39,477 bases of DNA from Salpingoeca rosetta (taxonomy: Eukaryota; Protista; Choanoflagellata): positions 1-39,477 of the forward strand of contig JAWQFM010000004.1 in NCBI GenBank assembly GCA_033442325.1, in the 5' to 3' direction. Both the position numbers and the translations under genes were made by a program. A model generated the notes under the pieces. It had not been told where the DNA came from. It worked only from the letters and a program-made list of their open reading frames with translations, and did no database searches. Shown in pieces: positions 25,964 through 39,477 of this stretch (positions within the stretch are counted from its first letter, which is position 1; each line of letters starts with the position of its first letter).

Positions 25964-26859
25964 GCTCACTGTCATGCTGCGACGTGGGCATGCCATCATC
26001 ATCCCCAACACTCATGTCCAGCGAGATGATACCACGCAAGCGGGCTGCTGTGGGGTGTGTGCGTGAAAACCACGTGTGCATGGGGCAGGTGATGAGCACC
26101 TATAGCGTGTATGCCATGTGAACTGACTTGATTGCAAGCTGGGGGATGAATGATGTGTGACCACGAGAGAAGACTGACCGATGTCAGCGCAAATGCTGTG
26201 ATTGCTCGCTCCGGTACCGCTCTGGAGGTGCGTCCCACTCAAAGGTGGCCTTCTGTATTGCTGGTGCCTTGGTCTCCGCCACTCTCACTTGCGGATTCCT
26301 GTCTGTTTGTTGTTTGCGTGGGAGGAAGAGACGATGCATCCGTGAGAACACACGTGCCAACAGCAGCAGCACCAGCAGCAGCAAGACAGCAGCAGTGACA
26401 GCAGGGACTGTGGTTTGGAAATCGGATCACCACCGTGCACTGATACACACACACACACACACACACACGCACAACACACACAGAGCGGAGGTGTGATTGC
26501 ACCCACCTCGCAGGTGGCCGTGAATGACACTGCTTGTCGCTTGCCTTGTGGTATGCGTATATCAGCGGCAAGTGTTGCCAGTGCACTCTCAAGAGCGTCG
26601 TTAGGTTTCTGCAGGCCACTGCCATATCCAACCACAAGAGAACAGCACATGCTCACGTTAGCCAAGCACAACAACGACGACCTGACGACGACGAAACCAC
26701 CACTTTCAGCAGACCCATCCTTGTGCCACAAGATGAAGAAGGAAAGAAGGGAATCCACACCCACAGCCACAACAAGACAGCAACAGCAACAACCGACAGC
26801 ACTGCCACCACAAACAGGACACCGCGTCCCACGTTCACGTACTTGGTTGCGTGACGCAT
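22138..26859 (-). pseudogene. Exostosin-family (GT47) glycosyltransferase, unprocessed pseudogene
   Basis: Minus-strand exon remnants in the expected order: signal-anchor-like MRHATKY...VLFVVAVLSVVAVAVLLWLWV (start 26859, tentative); VYVYPL...IYRAIRTAIRDG/YSTDDPSRACLLVP (24851-24695); EGRNHILFEYSD; VSMPLF...RKYLVTFR; NHLPKLHNGR; ELALETKFGLIVEAFGYHPFR; IMAAGTIPVIVVDHYVL; PYQDLLDWETFSIRIPEHRLLE; LPRILRSIPDEVVETMQR. Several frameshifts, an in-frame TGA at 24773-24771 and two broken splice sites. Both ends are approximate. Confidence 0.85.
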
Positions 26860-26997
26860 GGAGCGAACGAATAGTGCCCAAGAAGAAGAAGAACAAGAAC
26901 AAGAACAAGAACAAGAAGCAGAAGTCGAGGAAGGGACAGCGGGCATGGTGTGTGTTGGCTAACCTGAGGATCGTTGACGTGACGCCTGTTTTGTGTG

Positions 26998-27049
<52 letters not shown>

Positions 27050-27390
27050 AGAGACCTTTCTTCCACATTGGTCTGGTTGGCTGTTGGTGACTGGGTAGCG
27101 ATCACCAACAATCCCCTCTTCCCCTCTCCCACATCTCTCTTCTCCCCCATGCTGCTGTTGCGGTGACTGCCACATCACCCCCTCCTTCCTTCCTTGCCTT
27201 ACCTTCCCTCGTTGTGTGCACTGCACCAAAGAGAACAAGAAGAAGAAGAAGAAGCGTGCAAGCAAGAAGCGAGTTTGGGCTGCCACATCTCCACAGTCGT
27301 CGTGTCATCGACTGATTTCAGCTTTCCCCGTCTTCTGCACAAACACGCACAACAGACGTTTGTCGTGGCTGGTTGCGCGCAATGCACACA

Positions 27391-28061: not shown

Positions 28062-28634
28062 GCTGACGATGAGGATGATGATGGTGGCTTGAATGACAGC
28101 ACCGTGTACTTGAGCGGGTGCCATCACCGTGTGCCACGACAACAAGAGGCACTTCCTTCTCTCTCGCTCTGTCTCGGTATGTGTGGCTGATGGGGTGGGG
28201 GGGGATGTTGCCTGGGATTTCCATTGCACTGCACTGTACCTCAATGCGCTGTGTGACGCGACATGCACACCACAGTTTGCACGCCTTCTTCCCCCACTTA
28301 TCCCCTCAGCACGTCTTTGTTCTTGTCAACCACCTCCCCTCGTCAATCACACCCCACACCCCACACACATACTCTCTCCTTAACCCCTGTCACGATGTGT
28401 GCTTGCTTCAGAGCAGGCCTCTGACATTGTCATCACCGCTGCCATACGGCGGTCGGTGCCATGCACGGGCACGGAGACAGTGAGCCAGCTCGTGGTCTCC
28501 AGCGTGGTGGCTGGGATGTGCACTGAGGTGAAGGATCCCACCACCACACTTCCGCTTCCATGCCGCCATGGCTGACACCACTGGCACTGCTGGTTGACAC
28601 GCACCAGCAGGCATCGCTCCCAGCGCCACACAAG

Positions 28635-28714
<80 letters not shown>

Positions 28715-30981
28715 TTGAATTCATTTGCACTCGTTGCCCCACCCGCATGTCGAAGCAACCACGCACACCGACCACCCCTCGTCAACACAACACCATTCAG
28801 CGCCCCAAATGTGCTGATGCAGGGCTGCACTGGCACGTCGTGCACGACAGCTTCTCATCGTCAGTTCTCCCTTCTCTCCGTTTTTTGTCTTCACACAGGT
28901 CGCATCACCCCCGCCCAGTGGAGCGCCTGCATCTTGCTCCCCACCCTCCCGTTGCACGCGTGCACACACCGATTCCGGCCCAGCGCAGGCTGTGCTGCAG
29001 CAGCCAACCACCCACACACATCGTCGCCGTATCCCCGCATCAACCAACCGCAGCCACCGACAGCCACGGGCATTGCACCTTTGCTGTGATTGAGTGCTGC
29101 CAGCACGTGGCCCCACCTCAACCTGCCACATCATCATCACCATCCCCGACACTGCCATGTGTGTGTGTGTGCGTGTGCATGCATGCGTATTCACGCCATC
29201 GTCAACCACACCACATTGACACAGCAACAGCTGCACTGCTTGCTGTCCTGCGCGGCGTTGTGGCGGTGCACTCAAGGCCCTTTTGCCAGCCGGTTTCCCG
29301 CTGCTGCTAGCTGTGCTTCTCCTGCCCATCTCAATCACCTCAGCTTCAACCACAACTGCTGCTGTTTTCCGCCACCTCATCTTCTGCCAGCGAGGCCTCC
29401 CACCACGGTCATAGCCGTCACTGCACGCTGCCGGTTTCAAGCAGCTCACTGCGTTGGATGCTTTTGGCCCGTGGACCACCACACTGTTGTTGGAAGAGGG
29501 ATTGGCCGTGATTGTGGCGGTTGTTGTGGTGCTGCACGCCATGACATCAACAGCGGCAGTTGACGAGGTGATGGTGTGCTTGCGCTCCTCACTGGTTGCA
29601 GCGGCAGCAAGGAGGCGGCCATCGTGTTTCTGGTTCGCATGCATGTGCTGGCGACGTGGCGCAGGAGCGGTTCAAGGACTACGACAACGATTCTGTGCCG
29701 TTTATGAAGAACATTCTCCAACACGCGAACGACAGGCAGTACCGCATGCTGCGCGGCCTGATGGGCGTGTCTGTCTGCAACGACATGTTTGCGCCGGATG
29801 CACACGACCTCATGCACATTATGTAAGCCAGCGCCGCCCAGATTGAGGAGGAGGATCCACAACCCACGTACATCCACACAAGGTGCGCTCAAGGTCAAGA
29901 GGGCAAGAGTGTGTGTGTGTGTATGTGTGTGTGTGTGTGTGCGTGTGTGTGTGTGTTCATGAACATGTGTGAACATGTCGCTTCGTCGTTTCCCTCCTTT
30001 CTCCACTTTCGGCTTGCCAAGCCTCACCGCCACCCCTTGTCGTCCTGCCGCGTTCAGGCTGTTGAGTCGCTGCTCGCTGTGATCCAGGGTTCCCGGCTCC
30101 CGTGAATCGCCCAACACCAGCGCGACCGAGAACTGCATCTCCGCCTTTGTCAAGGTTGCACACGGCCTCTCAGAGGTGTGTGTGGTTGTGTGTGTGTGTG
30201 TGTGCGTGCGTTGGTACACTCCTTCGCCGTCCTTTTGCGTTGGTTGTTTGCTCTTGTTGTCACTTTTTCGTCGCTTTTTTTTCCTCATCCACCCATCCAC
30301 CATCAACCCTTGCACAGACGAGATGCTGACACATCTGCTTGACTGGCTGTCTATTACAGAAGACGACGATGAAGCAAAGTACATCTTCACATACCTCCTT
30401 CAAAGCGTGAGTGCTACCGCTGTACTTTGTGTGAGTGAGTGTGTGTGTGTGTGCATGGCCTGGTCGTGCTGCATGTGTCCTGTCGTTCTAGTTCCCGACT
30501 AACTCTCCCGTTCCCCCTCCCATTGCTTCCTGTACCTCCCTCGCCTTCCTTTTGTTGTTGCTTCTGTAGGCAAGATCCACGCGAGACCGCGCCTGAGTGC
30601 CCGGTGAAGATTGTGCGGGCGTGTGTTTGTGCAGGTGATTGGCACCCCCGCAGCCGCCGTCGACGAGCCCCACTGCCAGGGCATGTACACAGCCTCATGG
30701 TGCGTGGGTTGTGTTGTGTGTGATTTATGTGATGTGTGTGTGTGTTTGCTGCCTCGAATATGCGCGACTGTCGTGCACTTTGTGTACTTTCCCTCCTCCT
30801 TCCTCCTCCTTCCTCCTCCTTCCTCCTCTTTGCACTCCCCATTCTCACGCCCTCGTGTCGTTTCCTCTCGTAGAACATGCAGGATTCGCCTGCCCACGGT
30901 GTGTTGGGGCAGTTGATGCAGGACCCCGAGGTGCACACCCGCGTGCAGCGCGCTGTTGAGGCACTTAGCTCGTCCGCGTAG
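28062..30981 (+). pseudogene. Importin-5 (karyopherin beta-3)-like unprocessed pseudogene, fragmentary
   Basis: AQERFKDYDNDSVPFMKNILQHANDRQYRMLRG-LMGVSVCNDMFAPDAHDLMHIM*ASAAQIEEEDPQ (TAA at 29824-29826), frameshifted LLAVIQG/SRESPNTSATENCISAFVK, and DEMLTHLLDWLSITEDDDEAKYIFTYL. These resemble IPO5 segments as recalled (LRLLRGKTIECISLIG...EDDDPQ; NATENCISAVGK; WLSWLPLHEDKEEA). The fragments before ~29600 are much more decayed, so the 5' limit is uncertain. Confidence 0.8.
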
Positions 30982-31379
30982 TCGCCATGTTGTGATGTGT
31001 CGTGTCAACTTGTGCACCAGTTGAACGAATGGCTGAATGTCTGTCGATTCCTCTGTCGCATTCCTCTTGTTGCTCTCTTCCCTTGTCTTCTTCTCTTCTC
31101 TTCTCTTCTGTTCTTCCCTTCCTTCACTCTCCCTCTCGCCTGCTTGCTTGCTTGCTTGCTTATGTCACGCCCTTCCTGTGCTTGCCTGTTCTTTTCATTG
31201 TATGGCGCTGTGTACGGCTGAACACGTTCTTGGTGTGTTTGGTGGATGTGTGCTGCTGCTGCTGCCGTGCGTGTTTGATTTTGGCTTGTGACTGCAGGGT
31301 GTTGTTTGATGTGCAGAGGGGTTGGTGTTGTTTGGTTGGCTTGGCTTCCTGTTGCGTATGGGCACTGCTGTGTGTGTGG

Positions 31380-31436
<57 letters not shown>

Positions 31437-31939: not shown

Positions 31940-34900
31940 ATGTCCGAGAAGAGAGCGAGGAGGGAGGTGGAGGCGTTGCTGGCGCAAACGAAGCTGCCTG
32001 CAAAGAAGGAGAAACGGGTGAAGGACAAGATCAGAGCCATCGCCAACAACACGTGTGGGGAGATAGCAGAGTGAGTGCAAAAGCAACCAAAACGACGTGT
32101 TGGAACATGCATGCATGTGTTGGACACACGGACACTTCTTGTGGTTGTGCTTATTCTCCCCTCTCTCTCTGCTTGGCTTGTCCTTGTGTTGCAATGAGCT
32201 TGGTGTGGCTTGCTGTTGGGTGTTTACGTGTGCGCGTCCCCTCGCACCGCCTGGACACACTGTGTGTGTTTGTGGCAGGTTGGGACTGGCACCCTCATGT
32301 TTTTGCTCTCTTCATCCTCAGTCTTCTTGCTCATTGCATGACACACACCATTTGGAATGTTAGCTTGTATGATGCTGGCCTCGGCGTCATTGGGGCGCGT
32401 GCGGTGGCCGAGGCGCTCAAGGACAACACCTGCCTCAAACGACTCTAGTGCGTGGTGATGATGAATCTGCACCGTGTGACATGCATGGTTGATTGGGATG
32501 GCGGTGTTGCATGTTGCACCCCTTTTCTCCTCCCCTGTTTGCGCATGTTTGGCCGTGTGTTCACCTTCGCTCCCCGCGTTTCGTGTGTGCCTGCACAGCC
32601 TGGACAACAATTCCATCGGCGATGAGGGCGCTGTGGCGTTGGCGGAGATGCTGAAGCACAACACGACCCTCAAAGAACTCTTGTGAGTGTACACGCACAC
32701 ACACACACACACATGTGTGCTGCGTCACTGCCTGTTGCACCTTATCACGTGCACACGTGCCCATGTGTGGATTGGTGACTGTGTTGCCACCCACAACAAT
32801 CATCATCACGCACGCACGCACTCACTCTTCCTCACCCATGTGGCATCATCGCCCTGTGTGGCATCCACCATACCGTCTTGACAGCCTGTACAACAACTCC
32901 ATCGGCGATGAGGGCGCCGTGGCGTTGGCGGAGATGTTGAAGCACAACACGACCCTCAAAAGGCTCGAGTGAGTGTGTACACGCACACATGTACATGTAT
33001 GCTGCGTCACTGTCGTTGCACCTTATCACGTGCACATGTGTGGATTGATGACTGTGTTGACACCTACAACAATCATCATCACTCACTCACTCACTCTTTC
33101 TCATCCATGTGGCAACATCGCCCTGCGTGGCATCATACCGTCTTGGCAGCCTGGATGGCAATTCCATCGGTCCTGAGGGCGCTGTGGCGTTGGCGGAGAT
33201 GCTGAAGCACAACACGGCCCTCAAACAACTCCAGTGAGTGGAAGCTCCTCTTTGAAATGTGTGTCTTTAGGCGCTTCTTCTGCAATACCCATGTGCAGAT
33301 GGAGGCACTGCAAGCCACCCACGATGTCCCTGCGACTTGCTTGTTTGACCAACCAACAGATGCTTCCAGCCTTCACCTGTGCCACAAATGCTGCCACATC
33401 TTGTACAACTGGCATTGCCCCCTTTGCTTCCGCCATTGTGACTTCAATGTCGTAGGACCTGATGTGCGAGCGAGTACGCGTGCACGTGATCCATATGCAA
33501 CCCACTTTCATCCATGACACTGACAATTGCTGCTTGTCCACCCGTTCCCCCTGCTCTTCCAACATGCATTTCTTGCCACTTGCAGCTTGACCAAGAACTC
33601 CATCACCCCGGTTGGCGGTGCGGCGCTGGGTGCCGCACTGGACCAGAACCGCACCCTGTCTCGGCTTGAGTACGTCAATTGCGTTGCGCCTGCCTCATGA
33701 ACGCCTGTGTCCTGTTGTGGATTTGTGTGACCAATCGCCACTCTTTTGAGTGCACGCCACACTGTGTGTGTTCCTCTCTGCTTGCTTGCATTTCTCCACA
33801 ACCCTAACCACCAACCCTCCTGACCCACGCACCGCACTTGCTGCCTGTTCCCAACCACACGCTACCACCACGTGTCCTCGTTTAGGATCAACAAGAACTC
33901 CACCGCCACCGCCCGCGCCTTTGGTGCCGCGCTGCCCGTCGACCGAGAACTCTACACAGATTGGTCAGTCAACGCGTGCTTCCACTCTAGTCGCTTGCTC
34001 CCTGCCTTCTCTCTGAATTCTTCACCTCACACACACACACGCTGCGTGGTGCTTGCGCCCAATGTCGCGTGGGATCACAGGAGTGGCGATGATGAGGGCA
34101 AGGCCGCCTTTAACGAAGCACGCGAGGAGAAGAAGCGGCAGCATGAGCAACTGTTTGCCGCCTGCAGGGATGGCGACGCTTCCGTTGTCACCTCCCTCAT
34201 GGAGCAGGACAATGCAGACATCAACCAACAGGACAAGCGGGTATGTTCATCATGTGTGTGTTGTGCTTGTATGTGAACGGCGCTCGCTCATGGTTGCACC
34301 GGCCGTGTGTTCGTTTCCAACAGATCCTCACCACACGTGCCATGCCCCTTCCTGCCCCCCACCCAAACACAGGGCGACACACCGCTGCACGTTGCCTGCA
34401 GGCACAACCAGCCCGCCGTCGTGGAGCTGCTCCTGAAGAAGGGCGCAGACACTGCCGTCAAGAACATCAGGGTACGCGCGCATGTGCCGTGGGTGCGACG
34501 CCTTTATTGCACAACCGCGCCTCTTTTCAATGTGCACTGCTTCTGTGCTCGCTCACTCTGTCCGCATCCAACATCCACAGGGTGGAACACCATTCATGGT
34601 GGCGCAGAAACGCAATTTCCACGCCATCACCAGTATCCCAGGGCTCGACCCAGACAGCAAACCCCAGCAACAACCACAGCAACAACAGCAACAACCAAAG
34701 CAAGAGCAGCAGCAGGCGGACATGACAGCTTCAGACACACCAGATACAGAGCATGTACGTGCACAGGAAACCCATTGTCGTTTGCACTGCTGTACCACTT
34801 CAGACTTTTTTTCCTGTGAACCTCTTGCAACACACGCATCCGCCTTATCGTCTTGTGCGCCGCCATCATCCACCATCATACACCATCATCCATTCATTCC

Positions 34901-35865
34901 CCGCCAACGCCAATGCCCCCGCTGATGTACACAGGTGCACAGAGAGGCGGTGCAGGCGCGCATGATGGACATTGCGGAGCGCTCCGACACGCACATGGCG
35001 GGGCGAGCCAAGATGGGAGTATCTGGCCAGGGCCGCGCGGGCAAGACGACGCTTGTGAACTCGCTCAGGGGTAAGCCGTTCAACAAGCAGCAGCACTCCA
35101 CGCTCGGCGCCACCACCGATGACATGAGAGTCACCGTCCACACCATGGAAGTGTGCGACTGGAAGGTACGTTTAGTTGCGTGTATGTGCACGTGATTGTG
35201 TGTGTGTGTGTGTGATATGTGCATCCACCTTGTACCAACACTTTCCACCATCATTCGATCAATCACCACCTTATGTCATTGTTCACCAACACTCACAAAC
35301 ACCCACCCTTCCACATCTCGTGCAGGAGAGTGACCAGAGCACGTCCGAGTTCATCCGCAGTCTCGTTGGCACGGCGATGGCACGCGAGGCCGGCGTGGAC
35401 GAGGAGCTGAAGCGCGCGTCAGCAAAGGCACAGGCGCAGCACGCCACCCGTGTTAACCAGCACCAGCGCGAGAACGAGGACAAGGATGCCAAGAAGCAGC
35501 GCAAGAAGGGCCGTGACACATCCACAACTTCCACCCCCTCATCCGACAAGGCGTCCACCGCAGCCGTGCCTGCACCTGCTGCAGGTCGTGATGCCTCCAC
35601 AGCAACGCCTGCAGCAAAGGAGCAGCACCCAGCTTCCAGCCACGCCGACGTTGGTGACGACGATGCTGACGTCGTTGCCGTGACCACACCATCCGTTTCG
35701 AAGGAGGAGGTGGAGAAGGCAATCAAGGACATGGACTTTGATGCGACAATTCGCGAAGGCAAGATGCAGGTCTCCTTCAAGATCTTCGACCTGGGCGGCC
35801 AGTCCACCTTCTACGTCTTTCACCCTTTCTTCCTCACCAAGTGAGTCGCTGTGTGTATGCGTGCA

Positions 35866-35957
<92 letters not shown>

Positions 35958-37937
35958 TGTGTGTACGAGTGTGTGTGGTTATGTGTAAAAGAGGAAAGGA
36001 TAGTCAAAAAGAACAAAAAGGAGCCAAGAAAAGAAGGNNNNNNNNNNNNNNNNNNNNNNNNNNNNNNNNNNNNNNNNNNNNNNNNNNNNNNNNNNNNNNN
36101 NNNNNNNNNNNNNNNNNNNNNNNNNNNNNNNNNNNNNAGTGCTACCCCCCCCAAACCCTTACCCTTTCTCATCCCCACCCTTTTACTCCCAACATCCCCC
36201 CAACAGGTACGCGGTGTACCTGCTGGTGTTCTCGATGGAGGACCTGCTGCACCAAGACGAGAGCAAGCGGACAGAGGCGTGGGAGTTTATGGAGCACTGG
36301 TTGTCTTCTCTCCACCTCCACGCCAAGGGTGCACCCGTCCTCATCGTCGGCACCTTCGCTGATGTGGTCAGCAAGAGGAAGCAGCACGAACACATCTCGC
36401 GTGACATCCACAGCCGCCTGCGCCACAACCCAGCCTTCGCTTCTGTTGTGTACAACAGCAAGCACAAGCTGTGGTTCTGGCCCGTCGACAACACCAAGTC
36501 CATCGGCGACCCCATGATCCAGGGCCTGCGCCAGACCATCTCCTCCACAGCACTGGCGCAGGAGTACGTGAGCCAGGAGGTCGCTGTACCCTACCTCCAC
36601 CTCTACGACAAGCTCAACGCCATTGCCCGCGACGAGAAGCGGCCGCTGCTCACGTTTGACGAGGTGGTCCAGATTGCGCGCACCTGTGGGCTGCGCACAC
36701 GTGAGGAGACGAGGGCCTGCCTGCAGTTCCTGCACCTGTACTCCATGGTGCTGTACTACGACAGCGTGCCAGGCATGGAAGACTATGTGATCCTGAGCCC
36801 GCAGTGGGCGGTGGACACGATGACGCGCGTCATCCGCACGTTTGGCCTGCACGACGACGATGTGCAGGGGCCGGAGGTGCGGGCACTCGGCGCCGACGTG
36901 TGGGACGACCTTGTCGACCGCGGCATCCTGCACCGTCGTCTGCTGGAGGTGTTGTGGAGAGACGTGGACAGCGACTTGGTTGACCCGTTCCTGCGCCTCA
37001 TGATGCAATATGGGCTGTGCATTCAATACTCTCCACCCAAGCTGGTGGACAGCCGCAGAGCACTCGCCCGCGCCAACTCCGGCCACGGTGACAACGATGG
37101 TGTGAGCAAGGGCAATGACGCACACCAACGCCAGCAGCACCAGCAGCAGCAATACCTGGTCCCAGCCATTCTGCCAATGACGATTCGCCACAACAACAGC
37201 ACGATGGCATCCGTGTCGCTGAGCACGACGGCAGCACAGCAGGCCAACCCATATCTTGGACACGAGGAGAAGACGGCCTACGTCGCCTTCAGCCTGAAGC
37301 AATTCAAGCGAAGTGCGAGCGTGCGAGCTGAGCATGCACAGCACGCATCGTTCCTGCCAGAGGGGCTGTTCACAGTTGTGCTGGCGCATGTGATGGCGCA
37401 TGCACAGCACGGCGCATCACAGGAGCCGCAGCTGAGCCGCACCCACGCCATCTGCTTCATGGAGTCGACCAAGCTGGAGCTGCAGCTTGTGCCGGCTGTT
37501 GGCGGCATCAAGATGAAGATCACGAGCGCACAGCCACGCGCCATGCTGCACATGCTGCACACCATGATCAGCGAGGCCGCCAGAGAGCGCTATCCTGAGC
37601 TGAAGAGCAGCCTGTTGTTGCCGTACGACGACAAGACGCTGCTGTTCTTTGAGGATGTGCTGCACCACCACAAGAGCAAGCAGGACATGTGGGTGGACGA
37701 GCAGCTGCTGTCACCCGATGACCTGGTCGCCAAGTACGGCCCTCTTCTGCCCGTTCTCGGCCTGCAGGACAAGTACGACGTCTTCATCAGCTACAGGTGA
37801 GACGGTGTGCGTGTGTGTGTGTGTGTGTGTGCGTGCTTATGCGTGCGTGCGTGTGTGTGTACGTGCGTATGTGTACGTGTGTGTGTGTGTGTGTGTGTGT
37901 GTGCAAGTGTGTGTGTATGTGTGTGTGTGCGTGCGTG

Positions 37938-37969
<32 letters not shown>

Positions 37970-39216
37970 CAAGGATGTCTGTCACTTTCACCCAGTAGCC
38001 ACGACTAATGCATGCAGTTTACACTTTTCTCAACACTACCTTTTCAACCCCCCCCCCCCCAGGCAACGCGCCAACAGCGGGCTGGTGATGGCGCTGCATC
38101 CGCGCTTGGAGCAGCGCAACCTGGTGGCGTTCCTGGACGCCAACAACCTGGAGACGGGCCTCAACTTCAAGTTGTCGTTCATGACGGCGATTGGGCTGAG
38201 TCTGGTGGTGTGCCCCATCGCGTCTGCTGCCACCATCATGCAGATGAGGCAGCTGCAGCACAGCGACTACTGCGACAACGTGCTGCTGGAGTGGATGACG
38301 ATGCTGGCGCTGCACGAGTTCCAGCGGGCGCACGAGGAAGATGAGGAGCAGCAACATGCCAAGATCCGCCTTCGCCGTGTCGTGCCCGTGATTGTTGGCA
38401 GCGCGTGGCACAATGTGAACGATAGCAGCAGCATGAGCAGGGCCGAGGTGAGCGAGTACGACTCGTTTGACCGCCTGAAGCGGCTGGCGATGACGTTGCC
38501 TGATGTTGTAAGCAAGGAGACAGCCGTAGCGCTGGACCAGTATTTCACGCAGGTGCTACACTTGCCACCGCCACAGCAGCACAAGAGTGTACGTGAGACT
38601 GTGTTGTCACTGTTTGACATTGACGCGGTGGTTGCTTTGAATGCTGTTGTGGACCGCACGTCACAGCTGCGCGACATTGCAGAGAAGGTGCGCCAGGTTG
38701 CCGTCTCTGCCAGAAGCGACGAACAAACAACGCAGGAAGCAGGCACAGCACGTCGATCCACGCAGGTATGGTATTTTGTGTGTGTGTGTGTATGTGTATG
38801 TGTGTGTGTGTGCGCGCGTCCATGCCTGCAGGCGCATCCCTGGCAGCTTGGCGTTCACACTCTGTTTCACCCACCCCTTTCACCCACATATCCAGCAGTC
38901 CTCCTTGTCGCTCTCGTCCACCACCGCGACAACTCCTGCTCCACCGCCACCCGCCACCCCATCTTCCTCCTCGTCCTCCTCATTGCCATTTGAGCCAGAT
39001 CTCGTTCAATGGCTCAACCGCCACTCGCTGCTGCCGCACGTCGAGTCCGCCCTGGTGGAGCACGGCATCGACTGCCTGGAGGTGCTAGTCGTGTCTGTTC
39101 ATGAGGATTTGCTCACGATGCAAATGTTGAAAGGTGCGGGTGTGAGAGTGGGCCACGCAGTCAAGCTGGTGCGAGAGGCAATGAAGTGTTATGTGGACGC
39201 AAGCTCAGCGTATTAG
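31940..39216 (+). CDS. ROCO-family protein LRR(6)-ankyrin-Roc GTPase-COR-TIR-SAM, ~1473 aa. Exons 31940-32070, 32364-32447, 32599-32682, 32885-32968, 33150-33233, 33586-33669, 33886-33963, 34081-34240, 34373-34471, 34581-34754, 34935-35165, 35326-35840, 36207-37796, 38063-38765, 38896-39216
   Basis: All 14 introns are GT-AG and phases agree, giving 4422 nt of open frame from ATG to TAG (assuming no exon is hidden in gap 36038-36137). Ribonuclease-inhibitor-type LRRs ([23 protein letters not shown]); ankyrin GDTPLHVAC; P-loop GQGRAGKT; [16 protein letters not shown]; VLIVGTFAD; COR motifs [20 protein letters not shown] and YLVPAIL; [12 protein letters not shown]...AFLD...DNVLLEW; SAM DLVQWL...[10 protein letters not shown]...[10 protein letters not shown]. 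Confidence 0.92.
32599..33233 (+). repeat. Tandem duplication of LRR exon plus intron cassettes (three near-identical 84-nt exons, two homologous introns; period 286 and 265 bp)
   Basis: Introns 32683-32884 and 32969-33149 align end to end, sharing gctgcgtcactg, gttgcaccttatcacgtgcaca, catgtgtggattg, caacaatcatcatcac and cataccgtcttg(a/g)cag. Confidence 0.95.
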
Positions 39217-39477
39217 CTCTTGGCCACTTGCCTCGTGGCACGCCCTTTCTTCTCTTTCACCACCGTCCATTTTGTGGCTTCTATTCTCTCCTCCAGTCCT
39301 GTCACCGTGGTGCAGTTGTTACATTTCGTCCATCACCCACTGTTCTGTTACACGCACGCCAGTTGTGGTTTCCTTCCTTGACGCTCGCTTGTGTTCCACT
39401 GCTCTGTGCTACTGCTGCTGCTGCTGCTGCTGCTGCTGTTGTTGTTGTTGTTCTTGTTCTTGTTGTTGTTTAAGTTG

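What the first reader, a model, noticed from the sequence alone, without database searches (positions are those of the whole stretch)
31940..39216. Candidate intracellular immune receptor: LRR-ANK-Roc-COR-TIR-SAM, a ROCO with a TIR effector in place of a kinase
Seen: one intact spliced frame joins an LRR sensor, ankyrins, a Roc-COR GTPase, a TIR and a C-terminal SAM domain. Established: Roc-COR is a nucleotide-dependent dimerisation switch (LRRK2, Dictyostelium Rocos); TIR enzymes are activated by clustering; SAM domains oligomerise. Inference: this follows the sensor-switch-effector logic of NLRs but uses a GTPase rather than a STAND ATPase, in a probable unicellular relative of animals. I cannot confirm that the architecture is unreported.
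Basis: partly seen in the sequence, partly recalled or inferred. Interest (0 to 1): 0.9.

Follow-up and report, generated by a model that had tools for sequence, protein, structure and literature searches.

The report
Choanoflagellate LRR-GTPase-TIR receptor-like gene
This is an intact, already annotated gene of the choanoflagellate Salpingoeca rosetta, one of about 30 recently multiplied paralogs that join a variable leucine-rich-repeat sensor to a Roc-COR GTPase and a TIR enzyme domain; it looks like an immune receptor, but the design and a paralog's TIR activity have already been reported.

Summary
A 15-exon, 14-intron (all GT-AG) frame at 31940-39216 (+) encodes 1473 aa. It is identical to GenBank PTSG_13152, a "hypothetical protein" of Salpingoeca rosetta, so the contig is not human. 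The N gap (36038-36137) lies inside intron 12. The Roc motif runs unbroken across that junction in 28 paralogs.

Domains:
- LRR, ANK, Roc and COR-A are firm.
- TIR is confirmed by fold, and its invariant E1209 aligns with the SARM1 catalytic E642.
- SAM is probable.

S. rosetta has at least 30 paralogs. Twenty-four of the 25 in the tree form one young clade. Each LRR is one 84-nt phase-2 exon, three of them in a recent tandem duplication. Variation concentrates on the xLxLxx surface positions.

It is not unreported. LRR-Roc-COR-TIR genes were described in sea anemones (2016) and Aplysia (2022). A 2026 preprint showed that the TIR of paralog PTSG_12359, 70% identical to this one, makes cADPR.

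Verdict: a new member of a known but functionally unstudied kind. The receptor-like logic is well supported. The immune role is still an inference.

The parts
31940..39216 (+). Whole gene PTSG_13152. 15 exons: 31940-32070, 32364-32447, 32599-32682, 32885-32968, 33150-33233, 33586-33669, 33886-33963, 34081-34240, 34373-34471, 34581-34754, 34935-35165, 35326-35840, 36207-37796, 38063-38765, 38896-39216. Product 1473 aa.
   Evidence: Hand-built model with all GT-AG introns. Identical to P0158 / NCBI PTSG_13152.
32364..33963 (+). LRR sensor region (aa 44-210). Six ribonuclease-inhibitor-type repeats, one per exon: five exons of 84 nt and one of 78 nt, all ending in phase 2.
   Evidence: LRR_6 73.6 bits. 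Exon table. Hypervariable xLxLxx positions.
32595..33240 (+). Recent tandem duplication of an 'LRR exon + intron' unit, covering exons 3, 4 and 5. Period about 265-286 nt, 2.4 copies.
   Evidence: Exons are 82-89% identical and introns 3/4 are 91% identical.
34127..34616 (+). Ankyrin repeats (aa about 226-308). Exon 9 is exactly one 33-codon repeat. A Q-rich linker follows, up to 34754.
   Evidence: Ank 3.9e-10 on exon 9 alone. Ank_2 46.2 bits on the protein.
34986..36498 (+). Roc GTPase domain (aa about 372-700), spread over exons 11-13. P-loop GQGRAGKT at 35025-35048 (K391); DLGGQ (D586-Q590); G4-like TFAD (T652-D655). Interrupted by a 134-aa low-complexity insert (aa 432-565, 35326-35727).
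   Evidence: Roc 56.7 bits and Ras 36 bits. Motifs conserved across paralogs. The insert is the least conserved region, mean 35% identity.
36038..36137 (.). Assembly gap (N x 100) inside intron 12 (35841-36206). It follows a (TG)64 microsatellite at 35850-35977.
   Evidence: The junction FFLTK|YAVYLLVFS is contiguous in 28 paralogs.
36592..37752 (+). COR domain. COR-A is aa 732-883 (36592-37047). Then a variable Q-rich linker. COR-B-like is aa about 961-1118 (37279-37752).
   Evidence: COR-A 66.2 bits against a cutoff of 35.3. COR-B is only 14.3 bits here and 18-22 bits in relatives.
37771..38699 (+). TIR domain (aa 1125-1345), an expanded domain of about 220 aa split by intron 13 (37797-38062). 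The putative catalytic Glu E1209 is encoded at 38289-38291.
   Evidence: AF2 pLDDT 87.6. Foldseek top 50 hits are all TIR, with RUN1 at E 8.9e-6. Family profile against PDB: Roq1 1.3e-10, SARM1 9e-9, with E1209 aligned to SARM1 E642. E1209 is invariant in 47 sequences.
38980..39195 (+). C-terminal SAM-like five-helix domain (aa 1396-1467). A Ser/Pro-rich disordered linker precedes it.
   Evidence: SAM_2 20.2 bits against a cutoff of 20.5 for this copy; 16 of 24 family tails hit SAM_2, best 9.1e-9. AF2 pLDDT 89.9. The best geometric matches are SAM domains, but Foldseek E-values are not significant.

Best explanation
The gene encodes a soluble cytoplasmic multidomain protein: LRR sensor, ankyrin repeats, Roc-COR GTPase, TIR enzyme and SAM domain.

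Proposed mechanism:
- The concave face of the ribonuclease-inhibitor-type LRR arc, perhaps with the ankyrin repeats, binds a ligand or guards a target. (Inferred; the pattern of variation fits.)
- Binding changes the nucleotide state and the dimer or oligomer state of the Roc-COR module. (Inferred from what is established for ROCO proteins; the GTPase motifs are intact.)
- This brings TIR domains together, helped by the C-terminal SAM domain. (Inferred by analogy with SARM1 and plant TIR-NLRs.)
- The clustered TIR converts NAD+ to cADPR as a signal, or consumes NAD+. (The catalytic Glu is present. A TIR 70% identical, from paralog PTSG_12359, makes cADPR in E. coli in a Glu-dependent way.)

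The gene is one of at least 30 S. rosetta paralogs produced by a recent lineage-specific expansion. The family evolves by gain and loss of single-LRR exons and by substitutions on the LRR binding face. That is the evolutionary signature of pathogen or microbe receptors. The most likely role is cell-autonomous detection of bacteria or viruses.
For: Gene and architecture:
- Intact gene, identical to the GenBank model.
- Domain order by Pfam.
- No signal peptide. The only hydrophobic window lies in the TIR core.

GTPase:
- P-loop, DxxGQ and TxxD motifs are conserved across paralogs.

TIR:
- TIR fold; the top matches are NADase-type plant NLR TIRs and SARM1.
- The invariant E1209 aligns with SARM1 E642.
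- Preprint 10.64898/2026.04.20.719644, Table S4 row 33: UniProt F2UB80, 1352 aa, TIR 1034-1255, E1118, 'Active yes, cADPR yes'.
- That protein equals P0163 / PTSG_12359. Its TIR is 69.8% identical to this one.

Family evolution:
- At least 30 paralogs.
- 24 of 25 S. rosetta sequences form one clade with SH-aLRT 100 and short branches.
- LRR motif counts range from 0 to 9.
- Among 39 distinct LRR units, positions 2, 4, 5 and 28 (the x of xLxLxxN) have 3.1-3.5 bits of entropy. Every other position has 1.95 bits or less.
- Against the nearest paralog, PTSG_08722, ANK, TIR and SAM are 98-100% identical. The LRR region is 84% identical, one whole unit is missing there, and the substitutions fall on the xLxLxx positions.

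Effector swapping:
- A PNP_UDP tail in PTSG_02681.
- A PARP tail in PTSG_12997.

Sensor swapping on a conserved Roc-COR-TIR core in other protists:
- FHA, Laminin_G_3, EF-hand and TPR.
Against: - There is no expression, induction, binding, GTPase or knockout data for this gene or any full-length paralog.
- The assayed TIR was an isolated domain of a different paralog, expressed in E. coli.
- Pfam TIR_2, SAM_2 and COR-B all score below their curated cutoffs on this protein. The SAM fold search is not statistically significant.
- The LRR entropy analysis used a motif-anchored set of units. It is not a codon-level test of positive selection.
- Large LRR families can also diversify for reasons other than immunity.
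- How a Roc-COR switch would license a TIR is unknown for any protein.
Confidence: 0.6

Rival explanations
1. The same molecular machine is used for something other than defence. It could perceive the bacterial cues that steer S. rosetta feeding, rosette development or mating. It could also act as a SARM1-like stress, NAD+ or cell-death switch.
For: The sequence-closest solved TIR is SARM1, a metabolic and axon-death sensor, and SAM plus TIR is SARM1's pairing. cADPR is a general second messenger. In the preprint the S. rosetta TIR is flagged for cADPR only, not for NAD+ depletion. Well-studied ROCO proteins (LRRK2, the Dictyostelium Rocos) act mainly in trafficking, cytoskeleton and development (my own knowledge, not checked here).
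Against: About 30 young paralogs, a hypervariable LRR face, single-LRR exon turnover and swapped NAD-using effector tails fit an arms-race receptor family better than a fixed developmental pathway.
Confidence: 0.25
2. The TIR and SAM domains act only as protein-protein adaptor modules, as classically held for animal TLR/MyD88 TIRs. They would recruit other factors without any enzymatic step.
For: Pfam TIR scores are weak. Choanoflagellates have other TIR proteins that could be partners (PMC6040629).
Against: The catalytic Glu is invariant in 47 family sequences and aligns with SARM1 E642. A paralog TIR 70% identical produces cADPR in a Glu-dependent way.
Confidence: 0.1
3. The long frame is an annotation or assembly artefact: two neighbouring genes fused across the gap, or a decaying pseudogene copy of a multigene family.
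For: There is an unsequenced gap inside the locus. Some paralog models are visibly imperfect; for example, PTSG_08722 lacks the P-loop segment.
Against: There is no stop or frameshift in 4422 nt, and all 14 introns are GT-AG. The gap is intronic, and the Roc motif is continuous across it in 28 paralogs. The same composite order occurs in about 20 paralogs and on complete single transcripts of S. infusionum.
Confidence: 0.03

Closest known systems
S. rosetta paralog PTSG_12359 (UniProt F2UB80), assayed in bioRxiv 10.64898/2026.04.20.719644
   Same: Same family and same LRR-ANK-Roc-COR-TIR-SAM order. The TIR is 69.8% identical and has the same LLEW catalytic motif. Its isolated TIR makes cADPR.
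   Different: It belongs to the other of the two S. rosetta subclades. It has a different LRR number and surface. Only the isolated TIR was tested, in E. coli. The window's gene itself is untested.
Cnidarian 'Novel Gene 1' (LRR-Miro/Ras(Roc)-COR-TIR_2; PMC5094078), Aplysia ROCO-TIR proteins (PMC9334734) and Chondrus TPR-ROCO-TIR (PMC11378527)
   Same: A Roc-COR GTPase followed by a TIR, with an N-terminal repeat sensor. All were proposed as immune genes from architecture alone.
   Different: No ANK or C-terminal SAM was reported for them. Orthology with the choanoflagellate family was not tested here, because I held no metazoan sequences. Some Aplysia members carry Death, MBT or EF-hand domains.
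Brown-alga LRR-ROCO candidate immune receptors (Zambounis 2012; Teng 2024, PMC11378527)
   Same: One LRR per exon, all introns in phase 2, exon duplication and shuffling of LRR units, and a lineage-specific expansion.
   Different: The algal exons are 72 nt (24-residue LRRs) and the proteins stop after COR, with no TIR or SAM. Here the exons are 84 nt (28-residue RI-type LRRs).
SARM1
   Same: The closest solved TIR by sequence, including DVFISYR and the catalytic Glu. The TIR is paired with SAM. It is an NAD+-cleaving and cADPR-forming enzyme activated by oligomerisation.
   Different: SARM1 is ARM-SAM-SAM-TIR with no GTPase or LRR. Here SAM follows the TIR, and there is a single SAM.
Plant TIR-NLRs (RUN1, RPP1, Roq1) and STAND NLRs in general
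   Same: The best structural matches of the TIR. LRR sensor, nucleotide switch, TIR effector. A multigene family with a hypervariable LRR face.
   Different: The domain order is reversed: the TIR is C-terminal here. The switch is a Roc-COR GTPase, not an NB-ARC/NACHT ATPase. None was detected.
LRRK1/LRRK2
   Same: ANK-LRR-Roc-COR core; a weak ANK_LRRK2 hit of 21.9 bits.
   Different: No kinase and no WD40 domain. UniProt's automatic name 'non-specific serine/threonine protein kinase' is not borne out.

Membership tests
ROCO proteins | Roc (Ras-of-complex) GTPase domain with G1, G3 and G4 motifs | tested here: met
   Pfam Roc 56.7 bits against a cutoff of 27. [13 protein letters not shown] and TFAD are conserved in paralogs.
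ROCO proteins | COR domain immediately C-terminal to Roc | tested here: met
   COR-A 66.2 bits against a cutoff of 35.3. The COR-B part is weak, at 14.3 bits against a cutoff of 27.
ROCO proteins | GTP binding and hydrolysis coupled to COR-mediated dimerisation | not testable with these tools
   Needs purified protein.
TIR domain (enzymatic, SARM1 / plant-TIR type) | Flavodoxin-like TIR fold | tested here: met
   AF2 pLDDT 87.6. The 50 best Foldseek PDB hits are all TIR domains with probability 0.95-1.0.
TIR domain (enzymatic, SARM1 / plant-TIR type) | Pfam TIR / TIR_2 above the gathering score | tested here: not met
   TIR_2 scores 23.4-25.9 bits against a cutoff of 28. However, the family profile hits PDB TIRs at 1.3e-10.
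TIR domain (enzymatic, SARM1 / plant-TIR type) | Catalytic glutamate in the alpha-C region | tested here: met
   E1209 is invariant in 47 sequences and aligns with SARM1 E642 (numbering checked against Table S4).
TIR domain (enzymatic, SARM1 / plant-TIR type) | NAD+ cleavage or cADPR production | not testable with these tools
   Shown for the paralog PTSG_12359 TIR in a preprint, not for this protein.
SAM domain | Five-helix SAM bundle recognised by SAM profiles | tested here: inconclusive
   SAM_2 20.2 bits against a cutoff of 20.5 for this copy; 16 of 24 family tails hit SAM_2, best 9.1e-9. AF2 gives a five-helix bundle at pLDDT 89.9. SAM domains superpose best (TM 0.6-0.73), but the Foldseek E-value is 2 or worse. 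Relatives P0187 and P0185 have clear SAM_2 after the TIR.
SAM domain | Head-to-tail polymer or ring formation | not tested
   No multimer modelling or experiment was done.
NLR / STAND receptors | NB-ARC or NACHT STAND ATPase as the central switch | tested here: not met
   No such Pfam hit at E <= 0.1 on the full protein. It is analogous to NLRs, not a member.
LRRK-type kinases (UniProt's automatic name) | Protein kinase domain after COR | tested here: not met
   No Pkinase hit. A TIR occupies that position.
SARM1 orthologues | ARM-SAM-SAM-TIR order | tested here: not met
   The order here is LRR-ANK-Roc-COR-TIR-SAM.
Exon-shuffled LRR-ROCO receptors (brown-alga type) | One LRR per exon, with uniform intron phase that allows unit duplication | tested here: met
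   Five 84-nt exons and one 78-nt exon, all phase 2. A tandem exon-plus-intron duplication. A unit is present in this gene and absent in its nearest paralog. The unit length differs: 84 nt here against 72 nt in the algae.

The most novel reading that the evidence does not exclude
[quoted passage not shown] In it a Roc-COR GTPase, instead of a STAND ATPase, gates oligomerisation of a cADPR-producing TIR. That would be a third, independently assembled 'NLR-like' solution, shared with the Roc-COR-TIR proteins of cnidarians, molluscs, cryptophytes and other protists. Its repertoire would be generated by shuffling single-LRR exons.
Probability: 0.35. Interest if true: 0.8.

Novelty: new member of a known kind. 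Interest (0 to 1): 0.45.

Why it matters
ROCO-TIR proteins have been noticed repeatedly in genome surveys, but no full-length member has been studied. Nobody knows what a Roc-COR GTPase does to a TIR.

S. rosetta is culturable and genetically tractable, and one paralog's TIR is already known to make cADPR. This family is therefore a practical place to test two questions. Can a GTPase replace the STAND ATPase in a sensor-switch-effector immune receptor? Did TIR/cADPR signalling of this sort predate animals?

The evolutionary features found here turn a domain cartoon into a testable receptor hypothesis:
- a young expansion to about 30 genes;
- one LRR per exon;
- a hypervariable binding face;
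- alternative PNP_UDP and PARP tails.

They also give concrete alleles to make: K391, E1209 and LRR swaps.

Tried and rejected
- Searches by exon. Split domains scored low this way (TIR_2 16.7 bits, because the first strand YDVFISYR lies in exon 13). This was resolved once the database protein id P0158 was found.
- Profile of the SAM tails against PDB sequences: nothing significant.
- Foldseek of the isolated SAM model: no hit with E below 2.
- PADLOC and NCBIfam: only ankyrin-type hits and one sub-threshold Thoeris ThcB4 TIR hit. The gene matches no bacterial defence system model.
- Bacterial origin of the metagenomic relatives labelled 'GTPase SAR1 family protein'. The one contig I inspected (L002) has eukaryote-type neighbours (SET/zf-CW), so I did not pursue it.
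- A second paralog inside the window: none (tblastn).
- Pfam on ten other long ORFs of the window: no hits.
- Literature searches for choanoflagellate + ROCO + TIR: zero papers. 'Salpingoeca + ROCO' and 'ROCO + NADase' gave only irrelevant hits.
- Metazoan orthologues. Both word-index searches returned almost only S. rosetta proteins. That reflects the tool's word-sharing limit and says nothing about animals.

Full report
**What is there.** The region is eukaryotic. It has short GT-AG introns, (TG)n microsatellites and about 55% G+C.

I joined 15 exons by hand. The result is a 4422-nt open frame of 1473 codons running from the ATG at 31940 to the TAG at 39214-39216. All 14 introns are GT...AG. 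This matches the finding's coordinates and its count of 14 junctions.

The translation is identical in every residue to database protein P0158, which is NCBI 'hypothetical protein PTSG_13152 [Salpingoeca rosetta]'. It lies on scaffold GL832995.1 of assembly GCA_000188695.1. The contig is not human, so that operator rule did not apply. The gene is intact, so nothing had to be read through a stop. I used exon-by-exon references until the database id was available.

**The gap.** The 100 N at 36038-36137 lie inside intron 12 (35841-36206), directly after a (TG)64 array. Exon 12 ends ...[17 protein letters not shown](K) and exon 13 begins [12 protein letters not shown]. This is one continuous Roc switch-II/beta-4 segment. 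In an alignment of 28 S. rosetta paralogs, every sequence reads through this point with no additional residue. No exon is missing and the frame is continuous. The gap is most simply an unassembled intronic repeat.

**Domains.** On the full-length protein:

| Domain | Pfam score | Curated cutoff |
|---|---|---|
| LRR_6 | 73.6 bits | 23.4 |
| Ank / Ank_2 | 44-46 bits | 21.1 / 27.3 |
| Roc | 56.7 bits | 27 |
| COR-A | 66.2 bits | 35.3 |
| COR-B (exon 13 alone) | 14.3 bits | 27 |
| TIR_2 | 23.4-25.9 bits | 28 |
| SAM_2 | 14-20 bits | 20.5 |

There is no kinase, NB-ARC or NACHT domain.

The GTPase motifs are intact and conserved: GQGRAGKT (K391), DLGGQ and TFAD. Roc carries a 134-residue low-complexity insert between strands 2 and 3. 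That insert is the least conserved part of the family.

For the TIR I aligned 47 family TIR(-SAM) segments (A1). Y1126, S1131, R1133, L1207, E1209 and W1210 are invariant. AlphaFold2 on that alignment gave pLDDT 87.6. All 50 best PDB matches are TIR domains, led by the NADase TIRs of plant NLRs (RUN1 at E 8.9e-6, then SNC1, RPS4, L6, RPP1, Roq1) and by SARM1. The family profile finds Roq1 (1.3e-10) and the SARM1 TIR (9e-9) by sequence. In that alignment E1209 falls on the SARM1 catalytic E642.

The C-terminal 80 residues fold as a confident five-helix bundle (pLDDT 89.9). Sixteen of 24 family tails hit SAM_2, best 9.1e-9, and this copy scores 20.2 bits. SAM domains such as CASKIN2, EphA2/SHIP2 and Ste11 give the best superpositions, but the E-values are not significant. 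Relatives from elsewhere have unmistakable SAM_2 after the TIR (P0187 at 52.8 bits, P0185). I regard SAM as probable.

The N-terminus is strongly hydrophilic. The only hydrophobic window is the buried TIR core, so the protein should be cytosolic.

**The family.** An exhaustive HMMER search with exon 13 (Roc C-terminus plus COR) found 1585 relatives. Two word-index searches list at least 30 S. rosetta proteins of this type on many scaffolds. Most have the same LRR-ANK-Roc-COR-TIR-SAM order.

In a tree of the Roc-C/COR/TIR core, 24 of 25 S. rosetta sequences form one clade (SH-aLRT 100) with very short internal branches. This is a recent, lineage-specific expansion. The 25th, PTSG_11865, pairs with an S. 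infusionum transcript that encodes Ras-Roc-COR-TIR-SAM.

The window's gene is 96% identical over this core to PTSG_08722. Between these two, ANK, TIR and SAM are 98-100% identical. The LRR region is only 84% identical, one whole 28-residue unit is absent from the other gene, and the substitutions fall on the xLxLxx positions.

**Gene structure.** Each LRR is one exon: five of 84 nt and one of 78 nt, all in phase 2. Exons 3-5 with their introns are a tandem duplication with a period of about 265-286 nt. The exons are 82-89% identical and the introns 91%.

Among 39 distinct canonical LRR units from the paralogs, positions 2, 4, 5 and 28 (the x of xLxLxxN, the solvent-exposed concave face) have 3.1-3.5 bits of entropy. 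Every other position has 1.95 bits or less, including those my motif did not constrain.

**Swapped parts.** Effector tails vary. PTSG_02681 adds a PNP_UDP phosphorylase-superfamily domain. PTSG_12997 ends in a PARP catalytic domain.

Outside S. rosetta the same Roc-COR-TIR core occurs in S. infusionum, Hartaetosiga, Mylnosiga, the cryptophytes Guillardia and Hanusia, the chrysophyte Mallomonas and many environmental contigs. There it sits behind LRR, ANK, FHA, Laminin_G_3, EF-hand or TPR sensors.

**What is already known.**
- LRR-Roc-(COR)-TIR_2 was described as 'Novel Gene 1' of sea anemones. The same paper noted TIR_2/GTPase combinations in oyster, Trichoplax and bacteria (PMC5094078).
- ROCO-TIR proteins were noted in Aplysia (PMC9334734).
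- TPR-ROCO-TIR was noted in the red alga Chondrus (PMC11378527).
- One-LRR-per-exon, phase-2 shuffling is the hallmark of brown-alga LRR-ROCO candidate receptors (PMC11378527).

[quoted passage not shown] That protein is 1352 aa, with the TIR at 1034-1255 and the catalytic residue E1118, and it is listed as 'Active: yes; cADPR: yes'. The abbreviations in the legend of the preprint's Figure 3 include LRR, Roc and COR.

F2UB80 is P0163 / PTSG_12359, a paralog of the window's gene. Its TIR is 69.8% identical to this one. A Guillardia relative in the same table makes cADPR and depletes NAD+.

I found no paper that discusses the choanoflagellate family as such, its expansion or its LRR evolution. 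Richter et al. 2018 mention only that TIR is found with Ank, Arm and SH2 domains in choanoflagellates.

**How it most likely works.**

| Step | Status |
|---|---|
| Intact gene | Shown |
| Domain order | Shown |
| GTPase motifs present | Shown |
| TIR fold with the catalytic Glu | Shown |
| Young multigene family with a hypervariable LRR face | Shown |
| Enzymatic competence of a close paralog's TIR | Shown by others |
| Ligand binding by the LRR/ANK part | Inferred |
| Nucleotide-dependent change of the Roc-COR dimer | Inferred, from established ROCO biochemistry |
| TIR activation by clustering, helped by SAM | Inferred by analogy with SARM1 and TIR-NLRs |
| A defence role | Inferred |

The main rival is that the same machine serves non-immune sensing of bacterial cues or an NAD+/stress switch. 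A pure adaptor role for the TIR is unlikely. So is an annotation artefact.

**Verdict.** The architecture is not new to science, and one family member has entered the experimental literature. This locus is therefore a new, uncharacterised member of a known but functionally unexplored kind. Interest is moderate. It would be high only if the GTPase-gated receptor function were demonstrated.

Noticed in passing
window 35850-35977, 37805-37969, 38777-38812, 31369-31435: Long (TG)n / (GT)n microsatellites lie in introns 12, 13 and 14 and upstream of the gene. The one in intron 12 abuts the assembly gap and probably caused it.
   Followed up: partly
window 35326-35727 (aa 432-565): A 134-residue low-complexity, charged and Ala/Ser/Thr-rich insert sits inside the Roc domain between strand 2 and the DxxGQ strand. 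All paralogs have it, but it is the least conserved region (mean 35% identity). Its role is unknown.
   Followed up: partly
P0158 and most paralogs (database names): UniProt names these proteins 'non-specific serine/threonine protein kinase', yet no kinase domain is detectable. This is probably an automatic transfer from LRRK-type ROCO rules.
   Followed up: yes
Paralogs P0002 (PTSG_02681) and P0184 (PTSG_12997): Two family members carry a different C-terminal enzyme module after the TIR-like region. These are PNP_UDP_1 (aa 1270-1492) and a PARP catalytic domain (aa 2103-2261). Both are nucleoside- or NAD-handling folds also seen as effector domains in other conflict systems.
   Followed up: partly
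Paralog P0157 (PTSG_08722) against the window gene: The two are 96-100% identical from ANK to SAM, but the GenBank model of P0157 lacks the P-loop segment. That is probably a mis-called exon in that model. Identity among paralogs is mosaic; for example, P0151 is 90% identical in the TIR but 28% in SAM. This suggests recombination or gene conversion between family members.
   Followed up: partly
window 1-31900; gaps at 4902-5001, 8353-8486, 10983-11164: There are three further assembly gaps. Ten long ORFs in the rest of the window gave no Pfam hit. The three annotated upstream genes (window about <21940-25771 on the minus strand, 26239-27288 on the minus strand, 28516-30981 on the plus strand) also have no Pfam family on record.
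   Followed up: partly
L001 17278-26916 (downstream of the window's end): About 9.6 kb without a called gene separates this gene from the next one, a FancD2 homologue. That is unusually long for this compact genome.
   Followed up: no
L002 2957-7438 (JGI metagenome contig Ga0494473_0000327): In an environmental relative, a separate ankyrin-repeat gene sits 40 nt upstream of, and on the same strand as, an intron-less Roc-COR-TIR gene. It could be a split version of the sensor, or a missed intron. The neighbours (SET/zf-CW) look eukaryotic.
   Followed up: no
window 39399-39470: (CTG)14 followed by (TGT)11 trinucleotide repeats lie about 200 nt after the stop codon, at the edge of the window.
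   Followed up: no
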